Virus record (IMG/VR): IMGVR_UViG_3300017963_000188 | Coordinates: 186,001-250,000 of that record | Direction: 5' to 3' (one strand) | Length of the DNA stretch: 64,000 nt | In this document: positions 24,350 to 60,211 of the stretch, piece by piece | Layout: each line of letters opens with the position of its first letter | How positions within the stretch are numbered: position 1 is the first letter of the stretch | Program-made: the position numbers and the translations under genes | The notes under the pieces: model-generated | Databases searched by the model: none | Told to the model about the DNA's origin: nothing | What the model saw: only the letters and a program-made list of their open reading frames with translations

Positions 24350-24411
24350 TCTCACTAAACTATTTATTAAAATCTAAAAGTGGATATTGTTGTTTGTTCA
24401 CGGAGACACTT

Positions 24412-24903
24412 ATGCCTAGAACTAAGGATAGATACAAATCTGAAGAGAAAGAGACAGAGAGGTTGGTACGGAAGGCTCCTAAGAAGCGTCCTCCTCGTAA
24501 AGATCGTAGACGAGAGCGTGTGAATGAGTCAGATCCCGATTTGAGTAGTTCTGATCCTGACATGTCAATGAATTACAAGCAAATTGGTGGTTCTCTTCAC
24601 AAGCTATCAGAAGATATGAGTCATTTATCTAGAAAAATCTCCAGCCTTTTCCCAGAATTTTCAGATGATTTGTCTGAGATTACTTACCGTATCGAGAGAC
24701 TAGCAAAAGAAGATTGTTCTCTGGTGCAGGCTGGGATGTTTAGAGGACTTCCCAAACAAGAGGCTCGTAAAGTTGCAAGCAACATGTTGGGTAGGCTGAG
24801 TGCTATCTCACATTATGCTGAAGTGAAAAGAGAAGCTATTGATTTGAAAAAAACTATAGAGAGGGACCTTGAGTTTGCTTCTCCCTCAACCAGAGAACTT
24901 TAA
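24412..24903 (+). CDS. Hypothetical head-region protein
   Basis: GGAG SD before MPRTKD, basic N-terminus, preceded by the T-rich motif. Confidence 0.6.
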   Translation: MPRTKDRYKSEEKETERLVRKAPKKRPPRKDRRRERVNESDPDLSSSDPDMSMNYKQIGGSLHKLSEDMSHLSRKISSLFPEFSDDLSEITYRIERLAKEDCSLVQAGMFRGLPKQEARKVASNMLGRLSAISHYAEVKREAIDLKKTIERDLEFASPSTREL

Positions 24904-25493
24904 TGACTTCTATCTCGACAATAGTCTATACCTGCTTGTGTGAAGGTTGTGGTGTGGATGACATCCAGGGAGAACTGTATGATAAGATAGGTCATCTCTA
25001 TCATAGAGATGATGTGATCAAGATTTCGAAACGAATTCTTGGCTTAGATAATGAATCTAGACTTATAGAGTTCAGAGATGAGCTTATTTCTGAGGGTGTT
25101 ACATTTTTTGATGTTGTGTTTTCTGGTCTTGCTCGTATCGAGAACATAAAGAAATTTGATCCTGAAGTGACACCTGATGCAACAGGTTTTGTAGACCGTT
25201 TAATTCAAGGCCCAAGACTAGATGCTTTACACCATATCTTAGATGTTCTGAAACGCTATAAGTATGACCTATACTTGAAATACACCAAAGATTCAGTCAA
25301 TGCTATGGTGTCCATTGTGGAGTCATATATATCTTGGCTTACAGACATTCATGTACTGATACAGCATCTCTTCATCCAGTATTTGGATGAGGAAATTGAT
25401 CTAGATAACCTTGAGGAAGATTTGAATGGCTTTTTCAAAACATTAGAGGAAAAGTGGTTCGATAGTCTCGGTTCAAGTTTTAACCTCATATAG
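24903..25493 (+). CDS. Hypothetical protein
   Basis: TAATG-coupled ORF, 196 aa. Confidence 0.6.
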   Translation: MTSISTIVYTCLCEGCGVDDIQGELYDKIGHLYHRDDVIKISKRILGLDNESRLIEFRDELISEGVTFFDVVFSGLARIENIKKFDPEVTPDATGFVDRLIQGPRLDALHHILDVLKRYKYDLYLKYTKDSVNAMVSIVESYISWLTDIHVLIQHLFIQYLDEEIDLDNLEEDLNGFFKTLEEKWFDSLGSSFNLI

Positions 25494-25502
25494 GATAGGA
25501 AG

Positions 25503-27008
25503 ATGGGTTTTTTAAAATATGCTGATGCTACAGTTTTAGTCCCTTCCATTGATATCGAGGACTGGTTTAGGGCAAAGAATCCTAAGTTCTCAGCTCGTAC
25601 AGCTAATAAAGCAGAGAGTATCCTGGAAGAGTTTGATCCCAAAGAATACTTATTGTCTCATTGCACAATTATTGCTTCTGTAGATACTGAGGCACCTGCC
25701 AATAGCAAGCTAGGTAAAATCAAGGTTGATGGTTTTGTTGTGGATCGTCAATATCCAGATTTCTATGTCACTGCTGATACATCAGTCTATATAAATGGTA
25801 ATGCCGATTGTTGGGAACGTAATCTGCTTGTAGCTTCTTACCCTACTTTTGTTGGTGGTGAGAATTATGTAGAACATGTTCAGATCCCAAGTTTGAGCAA
25901 AGGGAAGGTTATTGATGCTGTAGCTCGTGACCTTGGTGATACCATATATATAGACATCTTGGTTGCTACTCATAAGAAACATAAAGACTTGATCCAGGAT
26001 ATTCTCCGTAAAAAGATTACAACATTATCTATGGGCTGTGAGGTAGTCTTTACTATATGTACCAAATGTGGGAATGTGGCATTTGATGAAACGCAGCTTT
26101 GCCCTCATATTAAATACGAGAAGGGTTCTACATTTATAGATCCTGATGGAAGAGAGCGTATCGTAGCAGAACTGTGTGGGCATAAAGATGTGCCTGATTC
26201 AGTTATATTTATAGAAGCTAGTTGGGTGAAAGATCCTGCATTTACGGGAGCAGTGCTTCATTCTATATTGAACCCTAATATCATAGATCTAGAGAAAATC
26301 TCAGGTCTACTCAAGAATGCTTATGAGTCAAGACGTGAATCTGTTGAAAATGATAATCTTCGACGGGTAGCTTCTAGGATTGTTTTAGCCCAACCCCCAG
26401 AAGATGAAGAACCTGCTGAAGATGAAGCTGAGGATGCTCCTGAGGAGGGTGGAGAAGAAGGAGGAGAGGGAGACTGGCCAGATGATAGTGAGGGTTGGGA
26501 TGTTGAGATGGACCCTGTTGATGAAGGTCTGGAAATCCCTGGTGAGGGTGAATTAACAAGTTATACTGACCTCATGGAAGAGGTCAGGTTGAAGCTACTT
26601 CAAGATGTTTGGGATACTGTTCTTGAAGAAGCTCTAGAAGAGCCAGAACCCGAGATCACTCAATTTACAGAATTTGAAGATGATACTCTTCTAGAATCAA
26701 GAAAAAAGAGACTCTCTAAGAATGTCAACTCAGGTCTAGAAAACTATAGAAAATTTGGATGGCAATCTTTGAAAGATAAATTTTCTAGACTAGAACTTCT
26801 TTTGGTGGCTAAGAAGGCTGGAATTGATTTCTCATTTGATGAAGTAAAAACCTTGTTAAAAGTGGGTTCTATATCATCATATGGTGACGATCCTAAAGTT
26901 TTCCTGAAAAAATGCCAATATATTTTTAATAAATCTATCTCTAATAGAGAGATCAAGAGATTTATCCTTGGTGGATATATTTTGAGTCTGGCAAAATCTC
27001 GTAGTTAA
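25503..27008 (+). CDS. Putative prohead (capsid maturation) protease with Zn-finger insert
   Basis: N.NAD.W, NYVEH..., KGKVIDA, LSMGC, CTKCGN..LCPH, FIEASWV.DPAF..A. Lies upstream of the scaffold and capsid genes. Confidence 0.65.
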   Translation: MGFLKYADATVLVPSIDIEDWFRAKNPKFSARTANKAESILEEFDPKEYLLSHCTIIASVDTEAPANSKLGKIKVDGFVVDRQYPDFYVTADTSVYINGNADCWERNLLVASYPTFVGGENYVEHVQIPSLSKGKVIDAVARDLGDTIYIDILVATHKKHKDLIQDILRKKITTLSMGCEVVFTICTKCGNVAFDETQLCPHIKYEKGSTFIDPDGRERIVAELCGHKDVPDSVIFIEASWVKDPAFTGAVLHSILNPNIIDLEKISGLLKNAYESRRESVENDNLRRVASRIVLAQPPEDEEPAEDEAEDAPEEGGEEGGEGDWPDDSEGWDVEMDPVDEGLEIPGEGELTSYTDLMEEVRLKLLQDVWDTVLEEALEEPEPEITQFTEFEDDTLLESRKKRLSKNVNSGLENYRKFGWQSLKDKFSRLELLLVAKKAGIDFSFDEVKTLLKVGSISSYGDDPKVFLKKCQYIFNKSISNREIKRFILGGYILSLAKSRS

Positions 27009-27018
27009 GGAGGCTATT

Positions 27019-28116
27019 ATGGCTAGAAGAAACAATATGAATCGTAGACCTACGTCACGTCGTCGTCGTAGGGCGGATGCGTATGAGATGAATTCGGATC
27101 ATAGGCAGCCTCCCTATGATGCATACGCTAAGGGTGACCCTGAAGCTTGGGCAGAGGGAAAACACCCTTCAGACCTTTGGTTAGGTGAAGAGCCCAGAGA
27201 TGAAATCGGTATGGGTCAACCCAAGCCTGATTGGGGACATCATTCTGACGAGAGATGGAATGAGGGTACCTATGACAATCAGAAAAGTGAGCCTGCTATG
27301 GAACCCATGATGATGGCAAGAAGGAATAGGAAGTCAAAGGCTGATATCCGAAAGAAGGCTTTCCGTTGTGTGAAGATTGCTAAGCATATGCTTGCTGGTG
27401 CTTCTGAGGAAGCAATTGAGGATCAGGCTGTTGAGCTGATGACTCTAAGCAGCAAGGCTATCCTTGCTACTCTTTCCAGGATTCGTAAGAGTTCTGTAGA
27501 TACTAAGGTTGAGGATACCAAAGAAGCCAAGACCGAGGAATCTAAGGAAAAGAAGGTCAAAGCTGCTCTGACTCCTGATGAAGTCACTACTCTGAAAAGT
27601 CTTATGGCTAAGTTAGAGGCATGTGACACCGTGAAGGGTGAGGAAGGTTTGGAGAAAGAAGGTCAGGAAGAGGAAGATGAAGAAGAGGAAGGTGGGGAAG
27701 AAATGGAGATGGGGGAAGTGGGAGAAGAGGGAGAAGAGCTTCTAGATGAAGGTGAAGCTGCTCCAGCTCCTATGCCTGAAGGTGAAGCTGCTCCAGCTCC
27801 TATGCCTGAAGGTGAAGCTGCTCCAGCTCTTGAAGATGAAATGCTAGAGGACCTCATGGGTGAGCCTGGTCTTGACGTAGAAATGATGGCTCCTCCAATG
27901 ATGGAAGAAGAAGTCCTCCCAGAAAAACAGTATGACCAAGTGTTGCAAGGACTCTTTGATGAAGAGACCGGTGAAGTCAAAGCCAAAAAGTCTTCTCGTA
28001 AACCAGTCAAGAAGTTGGGTGGTTCTGTGAAGGTGGCTTCTAAGGATAAAGGTGGATCTGATCTATCGACTCTTTGGCACTCTGATCCTGATGTATCAGA
28101 TGTTTTCAAAGATTAA
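27019..28116 (+). CDS. Putative capsid scaffolding protein
   Basis: Acidic low-complexity protein between the protease and capsid genes. AGGAGG SD. Confidence 0.55.
   Translation: MARRNNMNRRPTSRRRRRADAYEMNSDHRQPPYDAYAKGDPEAWAEGKHPSDLWLGEEPRDEIGMGQPKPDWGHHSDERWNEGTYDNQKSEPAMEPMMMARRNRKSKADIRKKAFRCVKIAKHMLAGASEEAIEDQAVELMTLSSKAILATLSRIRKSSVDTKVEDTKEAKTEESKEKKVKAALTPDEVTTLKSLMAKLEACDTVKGEEGLEKEGQEEEDEEEEGGEEMEMGEVGEEGEELLDEGEAAPAPMPEGEAAPAPMPEGEAAPALEDEMLEDLMGEPGLDVEMMAPPMMEEEVLPEKQYDQVLQGLFDEETGEVKAKKSSRKPVKKLGGSVKVASKDKGGSDLSTLWHSDPDVSDVFKD
27748..27829 (+). repeat. 30-bp tandem repeat, about 2.7 copies (EGEAAPAPMP)
   Basis: GAAGGTGAAGCTGCTCCAGCTCCTATGCCT repeated exactly. Confidence 0.95.
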
Positions 28117-28166
28117 TGTGATGTAATTGACGAAGAAGATGAAGAAACGTCAACCCTAAAGGAGGT

Positions 28167-30822: not shown

Positions 30823-30878
30823 TCCTCTCCTTGTTTTCCTTTTATTTTATTCTATAACAGAACTGTGATGAGGTTTCC

Positions 30879-31610
30879 ATGTGGGAATATGATTACGAGT
30901 ATCCTTCTGGTTATAGAACATTAGTAGCCCCTCCTGATTCTGACAGATCTAATGGGGGTGAAGGTGATATACTAGACATAGAGGATATGTATCGTAAACC
31001 AAAGCATTTTGATACTGTTGTGGAAAAAGATATGAGAGGTGAATTAAGTTTTTACCCAGGGCAAGGAGCGTATGAAGACCCTGTTATTATAGAACTTGAT
31101 TCAGAGGAATATCGTGATCATCTCATAGCAAATGCTGTAGTATCTAGATTTTTGTGTGAGACCTCTCCTTTAATATTGAGTCCTAAATATCATTCAAGTA
31201 GAATTGCTGTGACCATGAAAGATATTGAGGGGCGGTTGTCTAGGGATGTGAAAAACAAGGCTAGGAGTTGTCGTACCAGATTACGCAGATCTATGCCTAA
31301 AAACAATAGATATACTTTTGAGGTACAATCAAGAGGTGGTCAGGGTACTCATGTAGTGACTGTGAAGGCTGAAGCAAAAGATAGAAGGATCAAAAATCTA
31401 GATAAAGCTGACCTTAAATTGTCTTGTTCTTGTCCATTTTGGATCTATTATGGGCCAGAGTACCATGCTCGAAGAGGTGGTTATTTAGATGGCAATTCAA
31501 AAGGAACTGCAACACCTCCTCGTATCAGAGATCCAAAGGGTAACAATTTGGTGTGTAAGCATGTTTATGCTGTGTTTGACTTAGTGAAAAATTATTCATA
31601 TAGGTGGTGA
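30879..31610 (+). CDS. SWIM-type zinc-finger protein
   Basis: LSCSCPFW...VCKHVYAV (CxC...CxH). Confidence 0.7.
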   Translation: MWEYDYEYPSGYRTLVAPPDSDRSNGGEGDILDIEDMYRKPKHFDTVVEKDMRGELSFYPGQGAYEDPVIIELDSEEYRDHLIANAVVSRFLCETSPLILSPKYHSSRIAVTMKDIEGRLSRDVKNKARSCRTRLRRSMPKNNRYTFEVQSRGGQGTHVVTVKAEAKDRRIKNLDKADLKLSCSCPFWIYYGPEYHARRGGYLDGNSKGTATPPRIRDPKGNNLVCKHVYAVFDLVKNYSYRW

Positions 31611-32683: not shown

Positions 32684-32762
32684 TCTACTTTTTCCATTAT
32701 GCTTTTATAACATCCCTATTTAGAGTGGATTTGTGTGTCCACTCTAGGAGGAAAGAAATGTT

Positions 32763-33050
32763 ATGCCTCTTTGTCGAGTCGGATCTGCCCTTAATACGGA
32801 TAGGTTCAAATATGGCATTCCATTAATTGGTGATGTGAATGGAGTTAATGTGATGTATCTAACACCAGATGTATTTGAGCCAACTTCATTAAGGGTACAC
32901 TATAATGGTCAAAAACTTCATGAAGGAGCTGTTGAAGATTACACTATCTCTGAAAGTGGTGGGGTAGGTACAGGTTATGATACTGTGACTTTGAACTTTG
33001 CTCCTTTTGGAGATGACAGAGTAACTGCAAATTATATAACTGCTATTTAG
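32763..33050 (+). CDS. Small beta-rich virion protein
   Basis: GDVNGVN...SLRVHYNGQKL...DYTI...APFGDDRVTANY, a domain type common in virion proteins. Confidence 0.55.
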   Translation: MPLCRVGSALNTDRFKYGIPLIGDVNGVNVMYLTPDVFEPTSLRVHYNGQKLHEGAVEDYTISESGGVGTGYDTVTLNFAPFGDDRVTANYITAI

Positions 33051-40341: not shown

Positions 40342-40444
40342 ACATAGATATCTCTATAAATAAATCTTCAAATTATATATTTATTTTTCCTGTCTATTGA
40401 TGGTCATGTTGCGCTATAATTGACAGAGGAGGGTTGTATAGTCT

Positions 40445-41593: not shown

Positions 41594-41663
41594 TTTTATA
41601 GAGGATACAGAATAACGATTATCTTTTTATGATTACCTAGAATAGGTCATGATTTAAGAGGAG

Positions 41664-43845: not shown

Positions 43846-43900
43846 TTCCCACTTGTCTTTTTATTTCTATAAGTAGTAGAATAGTTTTGCGAGGTTCACT

Positions 43901-46593: not shown

Positions 46594-47244
46594 ATGGCAA
46601 AGATAGACTTAGACCGTGACCTTGTAGTCATAGGGAACATTGTGGGAGACCATAGAATAGATGATTTGGGAGTGACTGTGGGATATGATGAAGCGGTGCG
46701 TCTCACAGCAAAACAAGTATCAAAATCAAAAGATTTGTTCAGAGACATTAAAGATAAGAAACTTAGAGTAGATCGTAGGTTGTATGCTTCTTCAACAAAA
46801 GTTCCTGAGAAACCTGTGAAACCAAAAGAAGAATCATTACCATCTTTGCCTAAGCCTGTAGCTAAGAGAGTAACTCAAAACACAAGCTCTCCAGATCTTG
46901 AAGCTGTGAAATTTTTGGCTGCTGGGAATGCTAGGACTTTGGAGAATCTTACCCAGCTCTTAGGTGAGGTTGTATCAGAACTGAAAGATATGAAGAGTTC
47001 AGTAGGGAATGGTGTTGATAAAGATACTCTTCGTGAATTGTTACGAAGCATACAGATCCAATCAGGATCTGGGCAGGATATAATAGATACAGAAGCACCT
47101 CGATATATACCTTCAGACCTTTTAGGTGCTGAAAATGTAGTTTCTACAAAGGTCGATGTCAAATCAGAGAAGAAGAAGACTGGTAAGCTAGATAGCAATT
47201 TGAAGGCTTTGAAGGAACTAAGGGCTAAAAAAGAGAATGGTTAA
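46594..47244 (+). CDS. Hypothetical protein, candidate actin partner
   Basis: Globular N-terminus, Pro/Lys linker, helical middle, basic C-terminal helix LKALKELRAKK. Directly upstream of the actin gene. Confidence 0.6.
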   Translation: MAKIDLDRDLVVIGNIVGDHRIDDLGVTVGYDEAVRLTAKQVSKSKDLFRDIKDKKLRVDRRLYASSTKVPEKPVKPKEESLPSLPKPVAKRVTQNTSSPDLEAVKFLAAGNARTLENLTQLLGEVVSELKDMKSSVGNGVDKDTLRELLRSIQIQSGSGQDIIDTEAPRYIPSDLLGAENVVSTKVDVKSEKKKTGKLDSNLKALKELRAKKENG

Positions 47245-47434
47245 TCTTTTTATATATATCTGAATGTGATGGGCTTTCAGGGATGATGTTGCTCAAACTC
47301 TAGAATCTATAAGATTCTATGTTTATTATGTGGCAAATATTTACTAGACGGAGCCGATCATAAGATGTTATATATAGACCTTGGGAGAAGGTCGCAATTT
47401 ATGTTATGTAGCTAACGTCAAAGGAGAACACGAG

Positions 47435-48702: not shown

Positions 48703-49823
48703 TGTACTATTGGCTCACAAATGCAACCAAAAAGTTCCTAATTAGTGAACTTAGAGAGTCGTTCGCTGATCATCCGTATTTCTCTAAGATTCAGGTCCAA
48801 GATCGGTTTTCTTTCAAAGAACGTCCTCAATTTGCTTTGATTATAAAGGGATCTAGTGGTGATAGGATAGTGTTATCACCACAGAATTTTGTAGGTATGG
48901 TGCATAGTTATTGTATGCTTGCATCTATTGATGGACATAAAGGACAGTTCTTAGAATGGATACGAGAAGATACTCAGGCTCTATATGATAATGATAATGT
49001 GTTCCCTACCGAGCCTGGGATATATGTTCTTGAACTTCTTGATGTTGATGATGAGAAAGAAGGTGGTACTGTAATTGTGGATGTTTTCCGGTCTATATTT
49101 GATGAGAATCTCATAACATTTGAGACTGGGTTAGAAACTGAAGCCTATCTTGATAATGAACCTATCACAAAAAGTCTTCGTCTTCGAGTAGATAATAATG
49201 ATTATGTCTATATTTTAGAGGAAGGTGTTGATTATGACCAGGATGGTAATAAAATCACTTTTCTCAGTCCTTTTGTGGAGAAAACTACTATCCTAGCAGA
49301 TTACAAAGTTTTGACTGGGAGTAATGGTCCACATACTTTCAATTCTTTTGGTTCGAATAATTCTATACTTCCAGGAGTAGTTCTAGCTTTCGGACATAAA
49401 TTGCTAAAAGGTGACAAGTGTGCTGTAGTTATAACGGATCGTAGAGGGCCAGCATTCAATGAATATGGTGGTCATTATACAATGAGCTTTGACATAGATG
49501 CCATTGCAGTAAAGGATTCTGAACAAGCAGAGCAAGTAGCTGACGATGCTGTGATGACTTTTCTGAAGAAAAAATCTCAATTTGAGGATGTTGGCCTGAC
49601 AATGGTAGATGGTCCTTCTTTGGGTGGTGAGTCTGAAGAAGTCTATGATGAAGAAGGGGATGAATATTATTTCTCAAATAGTTTTTCTATATCTTTCCAA
49701 ACAGATTGGTCTTATTATGAGCCTCTGCCACTGCAAGTCTCTCAAGTAGTGGTTTCTACGGTCTATGAACAGATCGTCACGAGATCTGAAAGACGTGAGT
49801 TAGATATAGAAAAGTTTTTTTAA
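48702..49823 (+). CDS. Putative tail terminator/completion protein
   Basis: ERPQFALII...G, SFDIDAIA..DSEQAEQVAD, SISFQTDW. Upstream of the sheath gene. Confidence 0.45.
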   Translation: MYYWLTNATKKFLISELRESFADHPYFSKIQVQDRFSFKERPQFALIIKGSSGDRIVLSPQNFVGMVHSYCMLASIDGHKGQFLEWIREDTQALYDNDNVFPTEPGIYVLELLDVDDEKEGGTVIVDVFRSIFDENLITFETGLETEAYLDNEPITKSLRLRVDNNDYVYILEEGVDYDQDGNKITFLSPFVEKTTILADYKVLTGSNGPHTFNSFGSNNSILPGVVLAFGHKLLKGDKCAVVITDRRGPAFNEYGGHYTMSFDIDAIAVKDSEQAEQVADDAVMTFLKKKSQFEDVGLTMVDGPSLGGESEEVYDEEGDEYYFSNSFSISFQTDWSYYEPLPLQVSQVVVSTVYEQIVTRSERRELDIEKFF

Positions 49824-49878
49824 CCTTTTTATGTCATCTCTATTTGTAGATGATGGATTCGTAGCAGCGAGGGAAACC

Positions 49879-50295
49879 ATGCCAGTATATAAATATGAAT
49901 GTAGCGGATGTGGTCTAGAATTTGACCGGCTTGTGTCTAGTTCCGAGGGGAGTGAGAAGACTTCCTGTGTGAATTGTGAAGAAGAAGCCACTAAAATTGT
50001 GGCTAAGGCTAGTTTTAATTTTTCATCTTCTCGTGCCCAAGGTGAAACTGGGGTGCATGATATTGACTATCCTGTTGTGGATAAGGCAGTGGGTCGTTCT
50101 GCTGAGAAGAGATGGATCAAGTTTGAAGAGCGTCGTAAAGCTGAAGACCATGCTAGGAGCGATTATGATAGTCCCTATCTAGGCAAAGTGCCTATTGGGG
50201 ATCATACTGACGGATATTATCGAGTACCTCAAGAAAGACTTGAGGTACGTCGTGAAGCAGCCAAAGAATTACATGAGGCTTTGGTTGGAAATTAA
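49879..50295 (+). CDS. FmdB-family zinc-ribbon protein
   Basis: MPVYKYECSGCG..F..L.....CVNC...A.K. Start moved to 49879. Confidence 0.8.
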   Translation: MPVYKYECSGCGLEFDRLVSSSEGSEKTSCVNCEEEATKIVAKASFNFSSSRAQGETGVHDIDYPVVDKAVGRSAEKRWIKFEERRKAEDHARSDYDSPYLGKVPIGDHTDGYYRVPQERLEVRREAAKELHEALVGN

Positions 50296-50342
50296 TTATC
50301 TTTTATTAGAAAAGTTAGTTAGGCTTTTTTTAGGAGGATAAA

Positions 50343-53300: not shown

Positions 53301-54566
53301 ACGGGTCTTAGATTTACAGTTCTAGAATCTACAACAGGATCATATACTGATGGGGAATCTTTCGGGATGTCTGTAGTTGATGAGATCCCAACTAATGCAA
53401 ATACTCCTGTCAGGACTATCCCTGGTGTTGAAATGACAGTAGCAAATACTGTAAATGTCAGTGTTGGTGATACTTCTATTGTCCGTACTTTCGATAAGTC
53501 CGGTAATGAACCATCTATCGGTGACTTCTATTACATCAGTTATAGTTATACCAAAGATAGTTGGGACACAGAACTGTTCACTTCTGATGAGATGCCTGTC
53601 ATTAAGTCCCTATATGGTGAAGTCTCAGTCGAAAACAGATTGTCTCTGGCTGCCGACATTGCCTTCAAGAATGGTATCCCATATCTTGGCTTGAAGCAGG
53701 TTCCAAAGGTTGAAGATTCAAGTCAGGCTTCTGTATCTAGTTTCATTGAAGCTATCAAAGAACTTGAGCAGCCTCTCCCAGGGGATGTGAAGCCTTACGT
53801 TATCGTTCCATTGACGACAGAAGCTGAAGTTATTAGCTATCTTGAGCAGCATTGTGCTATCCAGTCCAGTCCACGATATGGTAACAGAAGGATTGGTTTC
53901 TTCGGCTTTGCAAGTGGTACTAAGCCTACAGATGCTCAGGCTACAGCTAAGGCTATTGGTTCTCATCGTATGAGGACAGTATATCCTGATTCAGCTATCG
54001 TTGGAATCGAGAACGAGATTGGGGAAGAGACTGAACAGATTGTTGATGGTACTTACTTGGCAGTAGCTCTGGCAGCTTCTTGTCTCAATCCTATCAATGA
54101 CTTTGCTCAGCCTTATACCAATAGGACTCTGCAAGGATTTAAACGTCTTGGTCGTCAGATCAATACTGTTGAACAGAGTCAGACAGCTATTTCAGGTATC
54201 AATGTTCTCCAGGATACTGCTACTGCAATTGAAGTTATGCAGGGCTTCACTACTGATATGTCTGATCTGCTCACTCAGATTCCGACCATTACTCAGATTG
54301 ATGACCAGATGCATGTCAACATGACTAAGCGTCTGAAGAAGTTTACTGGTGTGAAGTTCTTACCTTCACTTCCTGCTGAGGTTCAGTCTGAGGCCAATGG
54401 TGTGTTGAGAGCAATGAAGGAAGCTAATCTAATAGCAGATTATGAGCCTGCGGTTGCTACGGCACATCCTGATGATCCAACATTGATCTTGGTTGAAGCA
54501 TATTATGCTCCAATCTTCCCGAACCTCTACATTCTTGTGACACAGCATGTAAGGATTCGCATCTAA
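50343..54566 (+). CDS. Contractile tail sheath protein, unusually large (1407 aa)
   Basis: N-terminal FPGVYTRT, sheath C-domain (H...S......RIGF, VYPD, Y.AVALA, GINVL, TTD, VEAYYAPIFP), with many inserted beta domains. Confidence 0.88.
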   Translation: MTPLGMGPFESHVFPGVYTRTVRERGGGPPAGIRPLVIIGVGQEYLEVTDLELVRGSSATVDQRIVNEDVSERFVLDETNPDNPVLGAADGVHSKFKVRNLPIVTGEGRGETSTSPTHVEVTVDGTLVAVAQVNGTKGEVTLQSIPAEGSTVLCTYYYNRTDTQVTEDVSDQVSEEYALLYSSPETFEVTEGINDTFKLSVNGGSEKTVTLTAGAGRTALQIIADINAAQVTGLTVSVDLDEQGQNRIELKAASEIEIGNGNANALLGFAAGQTSGRNKSFRTFQRPIVDGSNGGITSTDPTDVTVAVNGTDQTPVSIDGTNGWVTLSVPPPVGATVAVTYYFNTYQDTFDYLPNDDITEVGNCGYAPGRRDYLNLSDFVVSDGKIYWGTSVSVTGGDRSAGAEPFDDTQISTLLIDNRIYMAECERYVDTSVTPSVVSDNEFVLPMPPTTGNGRNSPLGSSLYETVSEGRIDLPTNRPDLVIAYRGRDVVDALNNGPIDVLEVDSSTRRVKLGGTVPPGDLVFCTFWYNRITDDTFTLECLNEGVSGTGKYSVLSSLTGTNQYAVLFAGKSGGLAETVQWPSGVETVPDAIHVGGDPVLEIVTVTFHDSTGTPAIFTNTEPGPYSCYDGASDLFYYNVDNIGMTNVDLSNSGAASIVSGACGTTIDCSGGNNLVEFTVDGVSVPVTLGTSATEAIADIVTAINLASNGTALSADIAETIGTGALTRLRIFSPTAPTGPDDVSTVVVESGTANTPLLLTEGDESTGIEGAVALPATLLSSNAESYAITAGVNDIFRLTIDGVPYEVSLTAGTRTAAQIATDINTETGASNAGSVTVGASNYLRLYSNISSPDSKIIIGDGTANTTLGFTSNQTGDQRLPGAEEISVVLNDDTTFKTRARASTVTQAGVGVFLRIESLTIGTTSSIAFGTGTDSAFNDTGLGIVPGTSGDVGEGAGSYFDVTSSHSEGSGTGTSNIGYPGQTYTDEVTGLRFTVLESTTGSYTDGESFGMSVVDEIPTNANTPVRTIPGVEMTVANTVNVSVGDTSIVRTFDKSGNEPSIGDFYYISYSYTKDSWDTELFTSDEMPVIKSLYGEVSVENRLSLAADIAFKNGIPYLGLKQVPKVEDSSQASVSSFIEAIKELEQPLPGDVKPYVIVPLTTEAEVISYLEQHCAIQSSPRYGNRRIGFFGFASGTKPTDAQATAKAIGSHRMRTVYPDSAIVGIENEIGEETEQIVDGTYLAVALAASCLNPINDFAQPYTNRTLQGFKRLGRQINTVEQSQTAISGINVLQDTATAIEVMQGFTTDMSDLLTQIPTITQIDDQMHVNMTKRLKKFTGVKFLPSLPAEVQSEANGVLRAMKEANLIADYEPAVATAHPDDPTLILVEAYYAPIFPNLYILVTQHVRIRI

Positions 54567-54748
54567 TTTAGTCGATATTTATCCTTCATACGCTTTGTTC
54601 TGAAATCTTCAAAAATCTTCACTGTGCTCTGAGTCTTTTTAGACTCAGGCATTTGATCTAGAAGATAATTGATGTTTTTGATGGCTTTCTCTACATTCCC
54701 TCTTTTTAGGTAAGCCAATACTTCAATTAGGACTCTTGCTTCATCCAT
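54563..54748 (-). CDS. Small hypothetical protein
   Basis: AGGAGG SD on the minus strand. Convergent with the sheath gene. Confidence 0.5.
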   Translation of the reverse strand: MDEARVLIEVLAYLKRGNVEKAIKNINYLLDQMPESKKTQSTVKIFEDFRTKRMKDKYRLN

Positions 54749-54842
54749 GACAACACCTCCTAACCTTATATACTGGTTAATTTTCTATTTTTAAAGTAGG
54801 ATTATGAGATTAGCTATATCTCAATGATAAGGAGAGAAAATC

Positions 54843-55196
54843 ATGTCTGATGCAACTATTCAGAGTACCTTACAATATCCTCCAGAAAGTGGTGTAAGCC
54901 CAGTTCAAATACCCAAGTCTGTCACAATAAGTAGTTTCACTGAGAAAGTAGACTCTACCTATCTGTTGGATACTGGTGTTGGGCAAGACCTTGATTTGGG
55001 GTCTGTAGCTTCTGCAAAAGCTCTTTATATGAGTTCAGATCAGGATATTGTGGTTTATATCAATGGAGCAGTTACTGGATTCAACATTGTAGCAAATGGT
55101 TACTTCATTTTGGCTGGTGGGGCTTCTGATATCACTTCGATTTCTGTTGATGTTTCTGTGGACAATACTTCGATTCGACTTTGGGCCGTTGAATGA
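54843..55196 (+). CDS. Putative small virion protein
   Basis: AAGGAG SD, beta-rich, 117 aa. Confidence 0.55.
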   Translation: MSDATIQSTLQYPPESGVSPVQIPKSVTISSFTEKVDSTYLLDTGVGQDLDLGSVASAKALYMSSDQDIVVYINGAVTGFNIVANGYFILAGGASDITSISVDVSVDNTSIRLWAVE

Positions 55197-55468: not shown

Positions 55469-55703
55469 TTTTCGAGGGAAGAATCACTTTACCTTCCGTG
55501 ACCCCATATCTTTGACGTAATGATTTCTTACGATCTCTTTGAGCTGCCCACCGATCCAGTTCTGATTTTGAGAACATATAAGGTTTTTCTGAGGGGTTGA
55601 CAGGGGAAATCTCTCTACGGCTTAGGCAGTTATAGAATGACTTTTTCTTCAATCCAAGATACTGACAAGCATCATCGGTGCAAAAATACTTTTCTTCCAT
55701 CAC
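55452..55703 (-). CDS. Excisionase/MerR-like HTH DNA-binding protein
   Basis: FCTDDACQYLGLKKKSFYN...I.P......YMFSKSELDRW. Confidence 0.75.
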   Translation of the reverse strand: MMEEKYFCTDDACQYLGLKKKSFYNCLSRREISPVNPSEKPYMFSKSELDRWAAQRDRKKSLRQRYGVTEGKVILPSKIIPLG

Positions 55704-56500
55704 ATAACCAGATTTTCTACGATTTCTTTGACAACCTTAACCTTTTGGTATCCGCTAAGGAATCTAATGAAATCTTTTGATAGCCCTACGAGTTGGAATT
55801 TTATTGAAGCTGGCTCTACAGGGCTTCCTAATTGTTCTCCAACTTCTTCAGCCAGTTCAGTTAGACTATACTGTTCAAGATAATATTTTCTGAACATATC
55901 GGCAAGAGGAAACTTTGAACGCTGAGTTTTGGAATCATCTTCAAGGAATTTCACGAAATCTTTGAAGATGATCTGCCACTCAAGGTCATTCATTTCTTGT
56001 TCAAATAATCGCATTGTAGATTCAGGTGACCCTTGAAGACGTTCTTCCAAAGTGTCTATAACATCAGTTCCTGCTGGGCCATAGTATTCTTGGCCTTTAT
56101 CTCTGATCCACTTCTTTTTCTTTAGAACAGATAATTCTTGAACCGTCTTATTTACTAGCAGTTTTGTGATATCTGTGACCGTCTTATCTTCATCTAGTTT
56201 TTCGAACCAGTTATTTCGAATCAAAAACTCAATCACATCTTCCATAGCATCATTTGCATCGGCAGGGTTTGGGAAGAAGCTTTTTACCTTGTTGAACATA
56301 TAGTTCTTGATCTTCAAGGCTTCAGCCTTGTCAATTGGTTTACCTATTTTCTCAAACATTTGCATGAGATATAGAACCCATGTCTCAGAGTAACTTGCGA
56401 TAACTCTTCGTAATACAACAATAAATTGTTCTGGGAAGCTGAGAGCAGAAAATACCTTTTTACGTAATGCTCTAAGCTGTCGGGTCGCTATGCGTGTCAT
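55700..56500 (-). CDS. Divergent sigma-factor-like protein
   Basis: Region-2-like DANDAMEDVIEFL and region-4-like MFRKYYLEQYSLTELAEEVG. AGGAG SD. Confidence 0.45.
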   Translation of the reverse strand: MTRIATRQLRALRKKVFSALSFPEQFIVVLRRVIASYSETWVLYLMQMFEKIGKPIDKAEALKIKNYMFNKVKSFFPNPADANDAMEDVIEFLIRNNWFEKLDEDKTVTDITKLLVNKTVQELSVLKKKKWIRDKGQEYYGPAGTDVIDTLEERLQGSPESTMRLFEQEMNDLEWQIIFKDFVKFLEDDSKTQRSKFPLADMFRKYYLEQYSLTELAEEVGEQLGSPVEPASIKFQLVGLSKDFIRFLSGYQKVKVVKEIVENLVM

Positions 56501-56644
56501 TTAGTTCTCCTGTCTCTATCAGTAGATAACTCTCACTAAGAAGATAAATAAAAAAATTATAGAAATTTTCACTATAAAAATTTAGAGAATTGTAGTATAG
56601 AACTATAGGGCATGGATAATCTATGCTCGTAACAGGAGGTGGCT

Positions 56645-58201
56645 ATGAACTTTAAATTCAATATTCCAGAGCTTGATGGCATTATAGAGGCTGTATATGA
56701 GTCTCTAGAAATGAATCGTCAAATCCTGGAGAATCAAAGGGTTGGTCTAGAGAATCAGAAGATTCTCCAGGAAAATCTGAAATCTGTGGCTAATGCTTTG
56801 GGTGGTTCTGGTGTTCGACCTGAACTTAAAGAGTTGCAGAGTGTCGAAACACCGGAGAGAAAACCAAAACCTAAGTCCAAACCAAAAGCCCTAAAGCCAA
56901 AGTCAGCATCTGCTGAGGTTTCATGTTCAGAACCTCAACATGACCATGACCATGACCATGACCATGATGAGGAACAATGTATTGTGCCAGACTGTTCAGA
57001 GCCTTTCTATTCAAAAGGTTTATGTATAAGGCACTACCAATCACATCGATTAGCCCAGAAAAAGAGCCCTGAGTCTGAGCAAAGGTGGCTCAAGAAGTAT
57101 AAGGTCACTTCTGAGGATATTGAGAAGGGTAAAGCTCGAAGGAAAAGGGGGTCACGTAAGTCTGCTGTGAAAACCCCAGCAAAGAATGAAGCTAAGAGTG
57201 CTGACACAGGAGGTCAAGAAAAAGGGGAGGGAAACTACCCAAAAGCACGTAGGGAGACATCTGAGGCAGCGGTGTCTCCCAGTGCAGATATCTGCCTCAT
57301 AAATGATTGTGGTAGGAAAGCTCATTCAAGAGGGCTTTGTTCAGCTCATTATCAGCAGTATCGAGAAGCTACAAAGAAAGGTGGGGAGTCAGAGTTCTTT
57401 GATGAGCATGACATTGAAGTTCTCCCAAGAGGGAAGAAAGGGAGGCGTACAAAAGAAGATGTAGATCCAACTCCCAATGTCGATATGAGTAGGGTTCTTG
57501 AAGATAAGAAATCTTACAAGGAGGTGAAAGAGCTGAAATTGACCTCTGTGTCCATTTCAGAGATCACTAAAGAGCTTGACTCAAGTTTGGATAGGAAGTT
57601 CCCTGAGCTTGAATACTGGGTCTGGAGGGACAGTTTAAATGGTGTTCGTAGTGATGGACGTGTTCTTCTAGATCTAGAAAAGAATAGCCTTCTCTTCTTT
57701 TCCAAAAAGGATATGGCTTGGGAAGGTCAAGTGTGGGAACGAGAACTCATCGTGAGTTTGGCTGATAAATTCCAGGTCAGGTATATCAGGATAGATGATG
57801 ATTTGAAGGTTCTGACCTCGAATTTCAGGAATTATTATGCTCTGCCAGAAGAATCTGATGGGAGGTTTTTACTGAGGGCAAAGCTTCGTATGGATCGTCC
57901 AGATGTGTTCTGGGAGGTAGGTGACTTGTTTTATATCCACAGCTTCAGGATCGATGGTTCCGTGATTGATGCTGTGTATGCATGGCTAGTGAAGCCTCCA
58001 TGCTTTGATGCCCCATCAGAGGATGATCCTTTGTGGGAAGAATGGAACAATGCTACTAAGAACATCTGTGCCTTTGCAGGAGCTGATAAGATTGAGAAGT
58101 GGTTCGAGCTTCTTTTCAACGGGGTAATTCCTGTTGGAGCACATGATAAGTTGCGGGAAATTAGTTCTTCCCAGATTGAATCGGCTCTAGAGAAAGATTG
58201 A
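56645..58201 (+). CDS. Protein with two CxxxxC...GLCxxHY zinc-finger modules and an HD repeat
   Basis: CIVPDCSEPFYSKGLCIRHY and CLINDCGRKAHSRGLCSAHY. AGGAGG SD before ATG 56645. Confidence 0.7.
   Translation: MNFKFNIPELDGIIEAVYESLEMNRQILENQRVGLENQKILQENLKSVANALGGSGVRPELKELQSVETPERKPKPKSKPKALKPKSASAEVSCSEPQHDHDHDHDHDEEQCIVPDCSEPFYSKGLCIRHYQSHRLAQKKSPESEQRWLKKYKVTSEDIEKGKARRKRGSRKSAVKTPAKNEAKSADTGGQEKGEGNYPKARRETSEAAVSPSADICLINDCGRKAHSRGLCSAHYQQYREATKKGGESEFFDEHDIEVLPRGKKGRRTKEDVDPTPNVDMSRVLEDKKSYKEVKELKLTSVSISEITKELDSSLDRKFPELEYWVWRDSLNGVRSDGRVLLDLEKNSLLFFSKKDMAWEGQVWERELIVSLADKFQVRYIRIDDDLKVLTSNFRNYYALPEESDGRFLLRAKLRMDRPDVFWEVGDLFYIHSFRIDGSVIDAVYAWLVKPPCFDAPSEDDPLWEEWNNATKNICAFAGADKIEKWFELLFNGVIPVGAHDKLREISSSQIESALEKD
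56939..56968 (+). repeat. CATGAC hexamer repeat, 5 copies (HDHDHDHDHD)
   Basis: CATGAC x4 followed by CATGAT. Confidence 0.95.
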
Positions 58202-58235
58202 TCTTCATCAATATCTTCGATATACTCTAGAAGTT

Positions 58236-59039
58236 ATGAAGAAGATATTGATTCAAAAAACTTGTGCTGGTGTTTCTCCTGAAGTAGTGACCTTTGAAAC
58301 GGGGGCTTCCCCAGATCAAGTCTCTACTTTAGAATGTAACACATTTAATCATCATGGTGATGGTTATTCTCCGTTTTTCCCATCATCTTTGCATTTATTC
58401 TATGAGAGTCTATTGCTTGGTCGATCATTGCCTAATACAATGGTTATGAATCATATTCGTCATTATTCAAATGCTTTGGCTCCATGCTTTTTTCTATATG
58501 ATCTTGATATTTATTCAGAGAGAGCACCTGAATTGGTATCAGTTGTGGATCGTATTGAGCGTTGGGGAAGCGTTGGTTTTATCAATATACCACCTAGAAT
58601 AGATGCTCTACTATACAGTATATTTTCATTACTGCCTGATAAGGAACATGAAGAGAATCTTTCAGAAGATAGTTTGGGTGAAATACTACGTGTAGCTATC
58701 GATACTTTCCATTGGTATCTCTCAAATAACATCGTACCTAACACACATAGATCTCAATTGTCAGAACCTAATATTCTAGAACAGAGAGGGTCTTATGTGA
58801 TAGCTGAAATTGAAGACCTAAAAGACATTGACTCTCTATATCGTAAGGGTATAGAGTATGGTTTATGCTTTATGGGTGATGAGGCAGTGTTGTTCAAAAA
58901 GTCTATATTTATAGAAGTTCCTATGGAGAAGATCGCATCCAAGATGGGTGACTACAGAAAATTGGATAATTTTTTAATAATCTCTATTAAGAGAGAAAGA
59001 AGTTTTGTAATTTCTTTATGCCGTAGGTTTTTTGGTTAG
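58236..59039 (+). CDS. Hypothetical protein, weak DHH-like motif
   Basis: 267-aa ORF with FNHHG. Function not supported further. Confidence 0.55.
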   Translation: MKKILIQKTCAGVSPEVVTFETGASPDQVSTLECNTFNHHGDGYSPFFPSSLHLFYESLLLGRSLPNTMVMNHIRHYSNALAPCFFLYDLDIYSERAPELVSVVDRIERWGSVGFINIPPRIDALLYSIFSLLPDKEHEENLSEDSLGEILRVAIDTFHWYLSNNIVPNTHRSQLSEPNILEQRGSYVIAEIEDLKDIDSLYRKGIEYGLCFMGDEAVLFKKSIFIEVPMEKIASKMGDYRKLDNFLIISIKRERSFVISLCRRFFG

Positions 59040-59069
59040 TTATAGTGTAAACCACTAGGAGGTAATCGA

Positions 59070-59453
59070 ATGAGACGCCAAAATGCAGAATCAGCAATTA
59101 GCAGACTAGAGAGAAGGGTTCGTCGGAGAAAGTCCGCTTCGAGAGCTACCAATGTCGAACGTCCTAGTCGTAGAAGTGCAAGGTCTAAAAGACCCCGTAT
59201 GACCAGAGAGGCAGCATCTAGAACTGCTCGTATCAGATTAGCAAATATCTTGAATACCGCAGCAGATTGTTTGGATTGCTTGGAAGCTGCTGAGCAGGAA
59301 AGAGTGACTCGTGATACAAGGGCTGCTCGTAAGGATCTTGCTGGTATCATCACCAGGCTTGCTGACCTCACTGAAAATAAGGCTCCTTTTGATCCAGTAG
59401 CGATCCGTGAGCTAAAAGCAATTGAAAGGGATCTGGAACTGTTCCCTCGGTAA
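59070..59453 (+). CDS. Arg-rich basic protein
   Basis: AGGAGG SD. N-terminal half is highly R/S-rich. Confidence 0.65.
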   Translation: MRRQNAESAISRLERRVRRRKSASRATNVERPSRRSARSKRPRMTREAASRTARIRLANILNTAADCLDCLEAAEQERVTRDTRAARKDLAGIITRLADLTENKAPFDPVAIRELKAIERDLELFPR

Positions 59454-59517
59454 TTGCTGTTTGAGCATACAATATCTATGGGACTTGACCTGTAGATGTC
59501 ATAGATTGAGGTAGGCA

Positions 59518-60171
59518 ATGTCAAACGACAATTATATTTACCGTAAGGGAGCCACCCCTAATACTCGGACTGCTATCAGTCAGAAGAATAGGATCTTTGC
59601 TTTTGCAACAGGTGGAGATAGCAATCTGACTCAGATCGGAAATGTTGCTTCATTTGATCTTTCAGAGAGCAGAACCATTGATCCGGTTCGGGGTATTGGG
59701 TATGGTGATCAAGTAGCAGAACTCGTTCCTTCAGTCACTGACCCTATGAGCATCAGTGCTTCTAGGGCTATGTTGTATCTCCAGAACTTCTATCAGGCCC
59801 TGGGATACTATGGTGGTGCAGAAGGTCTTGTACGCTCCCTTAAACATCATAGATGGCCTTTTGATATAAAGCAGGAACTTGTCTTGTCACATCTTGTGAA
59901 TCAAGAGTTGAAATGGACTAGGGTTACACCTGCTGTTGAAGACAGTTCACGGGCCATTGTCACATATTTCGAGGCATGTTGGATCAATAGCTATTCAGCT
60001 TCTTACCCAGCAGATTCAGCTATTGTGAATGAAGACCTCGATATTACTGTCTCAGATGTTCTAGATAATGTGACTCCAAATCAAAGCCAGTATGCTAGGT
60101 TGACTTTGGATAATACATATTCTAGCTTGGATTCAGGTGGAGATATCAAACGCTCTGTAAGATTTGCGTAA
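59518..60171 (+). CDS. Tail tube protein
   Basis: IGNVASF..SESRTI..VRGIGYGD...ELVPS, PFDI, YFEACWINSYS..Y..D...V.E...ITV.DV, typical of myovirus tubes. Confidence 0.8.
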   Translation: MSNDNYIYRKGATPNTRTAISQKNRIFAFATGGDSNLTQIGNVASFDLSESRTIDPVRGIGYGDQVAELVPSVTDPMSISASRAMLYLQNFYQALGYYGGAEGLVRSLKHHRWPFDIKQELVLSHLVNQELKWTRVTPAVEDSSRAIVTYFEACWINSYSASYPADSAIVNEDLDITVSDVLDNVTPNQSQYARLTLDNTYSSLDSGGDIKRSVRFA

Positions 60172-60211
60172 TCCATCTTATCCCTTTATGTTATGTTATG
60201 TGGAGTAAATC

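What the first reader, a model, noticed from the sequence alone, without database searches (positions are those of the whole stretch)
24356..60189. Recurring T-rich 12-mer upstream of late genes: candidate phage-specific promoter
Seen, approximate consensus TWATYYTTTTAT, in gaps ahead of gene starts: 24356 TAAACTATTTAT, 30834 TTTTCCTTTTAT, 32697 TTATGCTTTTAT, 41619 TTATCTTTTTAT, 43853 TTGTCTTTTTAT, 47242 TAATCTTTTTAT, 49821 TAACCTTTTTAT, 50296 TTATCTTTTAT, 54778 TAATTTTCTAT, 59008 TAATTTCTTTAT, 60178 TTATCCCTTTAT. On the minus strand it precedes minus-strand genes: 56559-56548 TAATTTTTTTAT and 749-738 TTGATTTTTTAT. Orientation follows the downstream gene, usually about 30-55 nt before the start codon. 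It is not a sigma70 consensus. Inference: a late promoter read by a phage-encoded factor.
Basis: partly seen in the sequence, partly recalled or inferred. Interest (0 to 1): 0.6.

Follow-up and report, generated by a model that had tools for sequence, protein, structure and literature searches.

The report
Phage-specific promoter motif in a jumbo phage
The recurring T-rich word is real and is the core of a strand-specific, promoter-like element found in front of about 55 genes of an uncultivated 358-kb phage, but it is not confined to late genes and the factor that reads it is only inferred.

Summary
Unbiased motif discovery on the whole 358-kb phage genome recovers the same signal as a longer element, consensus ATwATcTtTTTATAT within a 20-mer. 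Eleven of the 13 reader sites fit it; 59008 and 60178 do not.

The element is far above dinucleotide-shuffled background and points with the downstream gene (33 sense, 2 antisense in co-directional gaps). It ends a median of 42 nt before start codons. It has no upstream hairpin, and 22 of 52 sites lie in divergent gaps, so it is not a terminator tail. A relative with the same GC content has almost none.

It is found genome-wide: 31 genes in the 0-150 kb small-gene regions and 15 in the virion block. "Late promoter" is therefore only partly right.

A second, stronger class (TTTAAA-N17-TATAGA, about 41 sites) precedes early-type genes, including a sigma-factor gene.

The phage has no RNA polymerase genes that I could detect. 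It has one sigma-70-family gene and two sigma-region-4 proteins.

Best reading: a -10-like, single-block middle/late promoter used by host polymerase with a phage sigma-like factor. No RNA data exist. It is a new member of a known kind, of moderate interest.

The parts
24352..24371 (+). Motif A 20-mer (reader site 24356), 41 nt before the start at 24412 of gene 24412-24903
   Evidence: Matrix score 13.0
26915..26934 (+). It lies inside the 3' end of the protease-like gene, 85 nt before gene 27019-28116
   Evidence: Score 13.4; protease-like match
30830..30849 (+). Motif A (reader site 30834), 30 nt before gene 30879-31610
   Evidence: Score 11.4
32693..32712 (+). Motif A (reader site 32697), 51 nt before gene 32763-33050
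   Evidence: Score 11.9
40369..40388 (+).
   Evidence: Score 13.0
41615..41634 (+). Motif A (reader site 41619), 36 nt before gene 41670-42239
   Evidence: Score 16.4
43849..43868 (+). Motif A (reader site 43853), 33 nt before gene 43901-44791. The next gene, 44795-46072, is a conserved virion or tail protein
   Evidence: Score 15.1; virion annotation
47238..47257 (+). Motif A (reader site 47242). It overlaps the stop codon of 46594-47244 and lies 124-178 nt before the next gene (start 47381 or 47435)
   Evidence: Score 14.8
49817..49836 (+). Motif A (reader site 49821). The gene start is more likely 49879, which has a ribosome-binding site, than 49831
   Evidence: Score 10.8
50292..50311 (+). 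Motif A (reader site 50296, register shifted), 32 nt before the 1407-aa gene 50343-54566
   Evidence: Score 12.9
54777..54796 (+). Motif A (reader site 54778, register shifted), 47 nt before gene 54843-55196. It lies back to back with a class B promoter on the other strand
   Evidence: Score 13.7
56544..56563 (-). Motif A (reader site 56559-56548), 44 nt before gene 55700-56500 on the minus strand. It has one of the two top scores in the genome
   Evidence: Score 17.8
730..749 (-). Motif A (reader site 749-738, register shifted), 54 nt before the sigma-region-4 gene 74-676
   Evidence: Score 11.3
59008..59019 (+). Reader site that does not fit the extended motif
   Evidence: In-register score 3.7
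60178..60189 (+). Reader site that does not fit the extended motif
   Evidence: In-register score 3.5
74..676 (-). Sigma-region-4 protein with a second helix-turn-helix (P0002). It is the ortholog of a protein conserved in all five relatives tested and is a candidate cofactor
   Evidence: Pfam Sigma70_r4, E 3.6e-9. Alignment A1. The model matches sigma region 4 domains at rmsd 0.8-1.5 A over 52-60 residues, but Foldseek E-values are weak (0.03-1.5)
758..1513 (-). Paralog of the above (P0001), next to the clamp-loader gene 2015-3328
   Evidence: Pfam Sigma70_r4, E 1.4e-9. Homologs at 40-54% identity in five relatives
54769..54798 (-). Class B promoter (TTTAAA-N17-TATATA here), 21 nt before the small gene 54563-54748
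   Evidence: Score 28.6
56570..56599 (+). Class B promoter, 46 nt before the HNH-endonuclease-like gene 56645-58201
   Evidence: Score 22.0; HNH match

Best explanation
The T-rich word is the core of a 17-20 bp promoter element, ATwATcTtTTTATAT, that occurs in front of about 55 genes of this 358-kb phage.

Its TATAT end acts as a -10-like block. An invariant T-run and an ATwAT block lie about one helical turn upstream. There is no -35 hexamer. Transcription would start roughly 7-12 nt after TTTAT.

Host core RNA polymerase is directed to the element by a phage sigma-like factor. The most likely factor is the sigma-70-family protein encoded at genome 175,525-176,199, which itself sits behind a class B (early-type) promoter. 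The two conserved sigma-region-4 proteins in the window (74-676 and 758-1513) may act as cofactors.

The class serves middle and late genes. These include the virion genes in the window and also many genes outside the virion block.

Shown: the motif, its statistics, its orientation and its spacing. Inferred: the start site, the timing and the factor.
For: The motif is real and oriented:
- Found de novo, far above shuffled sets, and rediscovered in two disjoint halves of the genome.
- 33 sense against 2 antisense hits in co-directional gaps.
- The same consensus appears in co-directional and divergent gaps, so its 5' part is not just stop codons.

It is a promoter rather than a terminator:
- 22 of 52 sites lie in divergent gaps.
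- The folding energy of the 45 nt ending at the T-run is -3.6 kcal/mol, against -3.1 for shuffles. Only 2 of 52 sites reach -10 or lower.
- None of the terminator-like hairpins found in the window lies at a motif A site.

Geometry:
- The minimum TTTAT-to-start-codon distance is 22 nt.
- The ribosome-binding site begins less than 22 nt after TTTAT at 11 of 50 sites, but less than 12 nt at only 1.
- The start site must therefore lie within about 12 nt of the motif, which makes the TATAT block -10-like.

Machinery:
- No match to Pfam RNA polymerase families.
- One Sigma70_r2 gene and two Sigma70_r4 genes.
- A class B site at genome 175422 lies upstream of the sigma gene.

Lineage specificity:
- Motif A is absent from three relatives, including one of equal GC.
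- The sigma-region-2 protein is poorly conserved (found in 2 of 5 relatives at 38-40% identity). The region-4 proteins have invariant recognition helices in all 5. A lineage-specific motif therefore fits the divergent sigma better.

Class separation:
- Class B is nearly absent from the virion block (2 genes, against 15 for A). Only 2 genes carry both classes.
- Class B genes are takeover-type: RNA ligases, an SNF2 helicase, MoxR/VWA and Bro-N.
Against: - There is no transcript evidence at all. Only DNA runs hold this phage.
- The host is unknown, so its primary sigma specificity is unknown. Motif A could be a host-type promoter without a -35 box.
- The position that would be -7 is not a conserved T (A 0.40, T 0.37).
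- 31 of the 55 motif A genes lie in regions that also hold class B promoters, so timing cannot be read from position.
- Only 33 of 101 genes at divergent gaps have an A or B site at my thresholds. Other promoters must exist, or my gene calls are imperfect.
- Gene calls and start codons come from my own greedy ORF picker with a ribosome-binding-site rule, not from a trained gene finder.
- One of the two top-scoring copies (window 14468-14487) points against the surrounding genes.
Confidence: 0.55

Rival explanations
1. Motif A is read directly by the host's primary sigma holoenzyme, as a promoter with no -35 box and a T-rich extended -10 region. Under this reading the highly conserved class B is the phage-specific class.
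For: - The core TATAT resembles a -10 hexamer.
- Class B keeps about 30 nt nearly invariant, spacer included, and has A rather than T at its last -10 position in 92% of sites. That is unusual for host sigma-70 promoters.
- Canonical TTGACA/TATAAT promoters are not enriched anywhere in the genome (6 found, 5.3 expected). Some non-canonical class must therefore serve as the host-read early class.
Against: - Class B has exact sigma-70 geometry (two hexamers, 17-bp spacer) and precedes takeover-type genes and the sigma gene.
- Motif A precedes the virion genes, from which B is nearly absent.
- Motif A is absent from a relative of equal GC.
Confidence: 0.22
2. Motif A is a binding site for a phage activator centred near -28 (T4 MotA-box logic). 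It would replace the -35 element and work with a weak TAGA/TATAGA -10 element 10-12 nt further downstream. The double helix-turn-helix sigma-region-4 proteins would be the binder.
For: - TAG begins 13-14 nt after TTTAT at 21 of 52 sites, and positions +15 and +16 are purines at 48 and 47 of 52 sites.
- 12 of 52 sites have a good TATAGA at offset 10-12, where about 3 are expected.
- The two conserved blocks, ATwAT and TTTAT, lie about 10 bp apart, which would suit a two-domain binder.
Against: - This geometry puts the start site at +22 or later, but the ribosome-binding site begins before +22 at 11 of 50 sites. Part of the purine signal is that ribosome-binding site.
- The offset of the downstream element is variable.
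- The recognition helices of the region-4 proteins are invariant in relatives that lack the motif.
Confidence: 0.1
3. The motif acts at the RNA level, as an AU-rich translational enhancer or processing site in 5' leaders, and not in transcription initiation.
For: It is strand-specific and lies 22-76 nt upstream of start codons. An RNA-level leader element would show the same pattern.
Against: - It carries about 15 bits of position-specific information with near-invariant columns, which is more than general AU-richness.
- In divergent gaps the motif begins only 12-50 nt from the neighbouring gene's start codon at 16 of 22 sites. That leaves little room for a separate promoter upstream of it.
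- Only 2 genes have both A and B sites.
Confidence: 0.08
4. The motif is a chance product of AT-rich intergenic DNA, or the T-tract of intrinsic terminators.
For: - The 12-mer alone is only weakly specific outside the window (13 sense, 5 antisense).
- In co-directional gaps the motif often abuts the upstream stop codon.
Against: - Dinucleotide shuffles, orientation bias, independent rediscovery and the equal-GC relative all reject chance.
- There is no upstream hairpin, and 22 of 52 sites lie in divergent gaps.
Confidence: 0.02

Closest known systems
Promoters of phage-encoded sigma factors in phiEco32 and phage 7-11 (single element TAATGTATA / TGATGT..TATA near -10)
   Same: - A single conserved block near -10 with no -35 hexamer.
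- Repeated ahead of middle and late genes.
- The phage encodes its own sigma-70-family protein and no RNA polymerase.
- The promoter layout was likewise inferred from over-represented intergenic words (PMC4331800).
   Different: - The sequence is unrelated and the block is longer (about 17 bp, with an upstream ATwAT block).
- The phage is a 358-kb uncultivated jumbo phage.
- The sigma-to-promoter assignment is untested.
T4-type late promoters (TATAAATA at -10; gp55, gp33 and the sliding clamp) - from established knowledge
   Same: - An AT-rich -10-only element.
- A region-2-type sigma gene elsewhere in the genome (175,525-176,199).
- Separate small proteins with a region-4-like fold, encoded beside a clamp loader and a possible clamp.
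- Iyer et al. describe minimal sigma factors and gp33 orthologs in jumbo phages that lack an RNA polymerase (PMC7824862).
   Different: - On the coding strand the core reads TATTTATA, the reverse complement of the T4 word. It is strongly oriented, so it is not the T4 element.
- No gp55 or gp33 homology was shown.
- Clamp dependence is untestable here.
T4 middle promoters (MotA box at -30 plus a sigma-70 -10 element; sigma appropriation) - from established knowledge
   Same: A phage-specific box upstream of a -10-like element is a possible reading, and the phage has region-4-like proteins.
   Different: The ribosome-binding-site positions place the start site too close to the box for this geometry at 11 of 50 sites.
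SPO1 middle promoters (gp28: AGGAGA at -35, TTTNTTT at -10) - from established knowledge
   Same: A T-rich -10 region read by a phage sigma on host core polymerase, and a cascade of phage sigma-like genes.
   Different: No conserved -35 hexamer here, the sequence differs, and no homology to gp28 was tested.

Membership tests
Canonical sigma-70 promoter | TTGACA-like -35 hexamer 16-18 bp upstream of a TATAAT-like -10 hexamer | tested here: not met
   Only one motif A site (43853) coincides with a 9-of-12 consensus match. Consensus matches are fewer than in shuffles in the window (36 against 48.9, and 39 against 48.4). They are at chance in all upstream regions (6 against 5.3).
Canonical sigma-70 promoter | Conserved A at -11 and T at -7 of the -10 hexamer | tested here: inconclusive
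   The core TATAT gives A 0.70 and T 0.99 in adjacent columns. The column that would be -7 is A 0.40 / T 0.37. The register is unknown without mapped start sites.
Phage-sigma single-element promoter (phiEco32 / T4-late type) | One conserved block at about -10, no -35, repeated ahead of phage genes in gene orientation | tested here: met
   (spacing and ribosome-binding-site limits put the start site within about 12 nt of the block).
Phage-sigma single-element promoter (phiEco32 / T4-late type) | The phage encodes a sigma-family protein and lacks its own RNA polymerase | tested here: met
   Sigma70_r2 gene at genome 175,525-176,199 and two Sigma70_r4 genes. No match to PF00562, PF00623 or PF00940. 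The PF00940 search had no working positive control, and very divergent subunits could be missed.
Phage-sigma single-element promoter (phiEco32 / T4-late type) | Transcription from the element depends on the phage factor | not testable with these tools
   No RNA data. Needs in vitro transcription.
T4 late promoter | TATAAATA on the non-template strand | tested here: not met
   The coding-strand consensus is tTTTATAt / TATTTATA, and hits are 33 sense against 2 antisense.
Late (virion-gene-specific) promoter class | Restricted to, or distinct at, late genes | tested here: not met
   15 of 55 genes lie in the virion block and 31 in the 0-150 kb regions. No column differs significantly between the two groups (smallest uncorrected p 0.034).
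Intrinsic terminator | GC-rich hairpin directly before the T-tract | tested here: not met
   Folding energy -3.6 against -3.1 kcal/mol for shuffles. 2 of 52 sites reach -10 or lower. 22 of 52 sites lie in divergent gaps.
Known RNA family | Match to an Rfam model | tested here: not met
   No Rfam match in the window at gathering score.

The most novel reading that the evidence does not exclude
This clade of huge phages (41 related loci from genomes of up to about 440 kb) runs a split-sigma system. A divergent region-2 sigma sets a lineage-specific -10-block promoter. The clade-invariant double helix-turn-helix region-4 proteins, encoded beside the clamp loader, supply the flap-binding or DNA-tracking half. 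This would be a T4-late-like logic evolved in an unrelated jumbo-phage lineage, with motif A as its readout.
Probability: 0.12. Interest if true: 0.6.

Novelty: new member of a known kind. Interest (0 to 1): 0.35.

Why it matters
It gives a testable transcription map for an uncultivated 358-kb phage from marine sediment. The map has two promoter classes, one of which drives a sigma gene, and a defined 20-bp element ahead of the virion genes.

Such elements help to set gene starts and operon boundaries in huge-phage genomes, where most proteins have no annotation. They could also serve as orthogonal promoter-factor pairs.

The kind of thing itself, a phage-specific promoter class, is well known.

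Tried and rejected
- **Nearest phage records.** Megablast of 20 kb of the window against GenBank phage records found nothing. Protein-level hits show only distant kin: an uncultured 485-kb phage at 42%, Tunturiibacter phage Tunturi_5 at 28% and Bacillus phage G at 26%.
- **Conservation in relatives.** The 41 related IMG/VR loci are at most 48% identical in the query protein, apart from two identical copies of this phage, so nucleotide footprinting is impossible. I fetched three relatives (400, 363 and 400 kb) and ran the same motif discovery. Nothing rose clearly above null level. Weak words such as GGTGTAGA and ATCTTCTTGTAG in the 58%-GC relative resemble the class B -10 element and motif A, but scored only 65-73, within the range of my shuffles, and gene calling there is poor. 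Degenerate-pattern tests were uninformative. The A and B matrices find 0-1 sites in the relatives.
- **RNA evidence.** Only four DNA metagenome runs were listed, two of which hold the sequence. I did not use read laying, because contigs cannot show transcript starts.
- **A separate late subclass.** Not supported.
- **A fixed downstream TATAGA as the -10 element.** Only 12 of 52 sites have it, and its offset varies.
- **A third motif in the virion block.** The word AAAGGTCAGG from the discovery run is noise, with 3-4 copies.
- **Annotation of genes behind the motif.** PHROGs gave no function for ten of them; two had weak matches to unknown-function families.
- **Host identification.** A phage histidine kinase matches Desulfobacterales and other sediment genomes at 31-50% identity. 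This is a weak hint only.
- **Fold of the region-4 proteins.** The model (pLDDT 74) matches sigma region 4 domains well locally, but no Foldseek hit reached E 0.001. The second domain remains unassigned.


Full report
**Setting**

The window is bases 186,001-250,000 of a single 358,038-bp virus record from IMG/VR. The record is rated complete, has 40.6% GC and no ambiguous bases.
- Two metagenome runs hold the sequence, one from sediment and one from seawater. Two other IMG/VR records carry it at 100% identity over the matched protein.
- The genome carries 49 tRNA genes and a tmRNA gene. Ribosome-binding sites of the AGGAGG type are very clear.
- The left third of the window (minus strand) holds replication and recombination genes: clamp loader, primase-like, Dda-like helicase, ribonucleotide reductase and a UvsX-like recombinase.
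- From about 22 kb onward the plus strand holds the virion block: a prohead-protease-like gene, a conserved virion or tail protein, and a 1407-residue protein.
- The nearest cultured phages are very distant: Tunturi_5 at 28% and phage G at 26% in one virion protein.

Every one of the 13 strings is at the stated place and strand. I called genes on the whole genome with my own greedy ORF picker and refined starts by ribosome-binding site. I masked tRNAs and the last 18 nt before each start, then ran a ZOOPS expectation-maximisation search. The background was order-2 and learned from the upstream regions themselves, so it is matched for AT content.

- Its log-likelihood at width 20 is 155-168. 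The best motif in 12 dinucleotide-shuffled copies of the same regions scored 62-81.
- Run separately on the virion block (205-320 kb) and on everything else, the search finds the same consensus in both halves: 22 of 44 and 48 of 193 regions.
- Genome-wide, 42 of 50 matrix hits at score >=12 are intergenic, although intergenic DNA is about 9% of the genome. Of those, 38 have a same-strand gene start within 150 nt.
- In co-directional gaps the hits at score >=11 are 33 sense and 2 antisense, against 1.4 in shuffles. The matrix was trained on the sense orientation, so this count is partly circular.
- A natural control is a relative of the same GC content (40.1%) with as much upstream DNA. It has one sense hit at score >=10, against 58 here.

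The bare 12-mer is much less specific. Eleven reader sites score 10.8-17.8 on the 20-mer, three of them after a small shift of register. Sites 59008 and 60178 score 3.7 and 3.5 and should be dropped.

**What it is not**
- It is not the T-tail of terminators. The 45 nt ending at the T-run fold no better than shuffles (-3.6 against -3.1 kcal/mol). Twenty-two of 52 sites lie in divergent gaps, where no gene ends upstream.
- The terminator-like hairpins that do occur in the window lie elsewhere.
- The 5' part of the motif is not merely stop codons, because divergent-gap sites show the same consensus.
- No Rfam family matches the window.

**Anatomy and likely start site**

The near-invariant columns are a T in the ATwAT block, three T's, and the T of TAT (frequencies 0.86-0.99). 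The two blocks, ATwAT and TTTAT, lie about one helical turn apart.

The end of TTTAT is 22-76 nt from the start codon at 49 of 52 sites, with a median of 42.

Downstream there is a looser signal: TAG begins 13-14 nt after TTTAT at 21 of 52 sites, and positions +15 and +16 are purines at 48 and 47 of 52. Only 12 of 52 sites have a good TATAGA there, its offset drifts, and part of the purine signal is the ribosome-binding site itself.

The decisive constraint is this. The ribosome-binding site begins less than 22 nt after TTTAT at 11 of 50 sites, but less than 12 nt at only one. If the site's own transcript carries the ribosome-binding site, the start must lie within about 12 nt of TTTAT. This makes the TATAT end a -10-like block rather than a -30 box. 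It is an inference, not a measurement.

**A second class and the machinery**

The same search found a stronger motif, class B, with TTTAAA and TATAGA (or TATATA) separated by exactly 17 bp.
- About 30 nt are conserved, and the motif is followed almost at once by the ribosome-binding site.
- There are about 41 sites. They lie in the 2-135 kb and 320-355 kb regions and are nearly absent from the virion block.
- The genes behind them are takeover-type: two RNA ligases, an SNF2 helicase, a MoxR/VWA pair and a Bro-N protein.
- One class B site lies upstream of the only Sigma70_r2 gene (genome 175,525-176,199).
- Canonical TTGACA/TATAAT promoters are not enriched anywhere.

No Pfam RNA polymerase family matches the genome. 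The search for the single-subunit family had no working positive control, and very divergent subunits could escape.

The window encodes two paralogous proteins (74-676 and 758-1513) with a sigma region 4 domain near the N-terminus, followed by a second helix-turn-helix.
- Homologs exist in all five relatives tested, with invariant recognition helices.
- The predicted fold (pLDDT 74) superposes on sigma region 4 domains at 0.8-1.5 A. The whole-protein Foldseek E-values are weak.
- The region-2 sigma, by contrast, was found in only 2 of 5 relatives, at 38-40% identity.
- Because motif A is lineage-specific, the divergent sigma is the better candidate reader. The invariant region-4 proteins fit a conserved cofactor role better. 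This is an inference.
- It echoes the minimal sigma and gp33-like proteins described for jumbo phages that lack a polymerase (PMC7824862).

**Is it late?**

Only partly.
- Fifty-five genes carry the element at score >=11. Fifteen lie in the virion block, 31 in the 0-150 kb regions and 7 in the 320-358 kb region.
- Sites in the virion block do not differ significantly from the rest in any column.
- Annotated genes behind it outside the virion block include a PAS histidine-kinase hybrid and a 2',5'-RNA-ligase-like protein. Most have no annotation.
- Only 2 genes carry both classes.
- The simplest reading is a two-step programme. Class B comes first and expresses the sigma gene. Motif A then serves everything later, virion genes included.
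- Only 33 of 101 genes at divergent gaps have either class at my thresholds, so the map is incomplete.

**Comparison with known systems**

In kind, this is a phage-specific promoter class on host polymerase.
- The closest architecture is the single-block promoters of phage-encoded sigmas in phiEco32 and 7-11 (consensus TAATGTATA; PMC4331800) and the -10-only T4 late promoter.
- The sequence matches neither. On the coding strand the core reads as the reverse complement of the T4 word, and it is strongly oriented.
- The T4 middle (MotA-box) geometry conflicts with the ribosome-binding-site positions.
- The recent phage G study reports only generic software predictions of promoters (PMC12484599).
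- I found no description of this motif, or of promoters in this clade.

**Verdict**

It is a new member of a known kind and of moderate interest. Its main value is as a handle on transcription in a large, unannotated clade of huge phages.

Noticed in passing
window 54769-54798 (-), 56570-56599 (+), weak 36944-36973 (-); genome-wide about 41 sites: A second, stronger promoter-like class: TTTAAA, exactly 17 bp, then TATAGA or TATATA. About 30 nt are conserved and the ribosome-binding site follows almost immediately. It precedes takeover-type genes and the sigma gene at genome 175,525-176,199. The last -10 position is A in 92% of sites, which is unusual for a primary-sigma promoter.
   Followed up: partly
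window 14468-14487 (+): One of the two top-scoring motif A copies in the genome (17.8-17.9). It points against the surrounding minus-strand replication genes, at the junction of genes 14119-14442 and 14468-16417. It may be an antisense promoter.
   Followed up: no
window 74-676 (-) and 758-1513 (-): Two paralogous proteins with a sigma region 4 domain followed by a second helix-turn-helix. Their recognition helices are invariant across five relatives whose genomes range from 39 to 58% GC. They are encoded next to the clamp-loader gene (2015-3328) and a possible sliding-clamp gene (6322-7485, faint match).
   Followed up: partly
genome 92,241-149,462 and 327,248 (outside the window): 49 tRNA genes, nearly all on the minus strand and grouped by amino acid, plus a tmRNA gene with tag ANDNALPMAA at 144,255-144,611.
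   Followed up: no
genome 93,495-95,450 (-), locus L118: The phage encodes a hybrid histidine kinase (PAS, HisKA, HATPase and receiver domains) behind a motif A site. The nearest bacterial homologs are in Desulfobacterales and other sediment genomes at 31-50% identity. This is a weak hint to the host.
   Followed up: partly
genome 4,121-5,242; 100,538-101,548; 75,670-76,680: Several RNA-repair-type genes: a T4 Rnl1-like ligase, an HNH domain fused to an RNA ligase domain, and a 2',5'-RNA-ligase / Acb1-like phosphoesterase. The first two lie behind class B promoters and the third behind motif A.
   Followed up: no
window 49831-50295: The longest-ORF start at 49831 falls inside the motif A 20-mer at 49817-49836. 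The ATG at 49879, which has a GAGGGAAA ribosome-binding site, is the more likely start.
   Followed up: partly
window 24000-63999: Matches to the sigma-70 consensus are fewer than in dinucleotide shuffles (36 against 48.9 +/- 5.2, and 39 against 48.4 +/- 6.1).
   Followed up: partly
relative G003 (loci L092-L111, 58% GC): Weak over-represented words GGTGTAGA and ATCTTCTTGTAG upstream of genes. They resemble the class B -10 element and motif A of this phage but are not above null level.
   Followed up: partly
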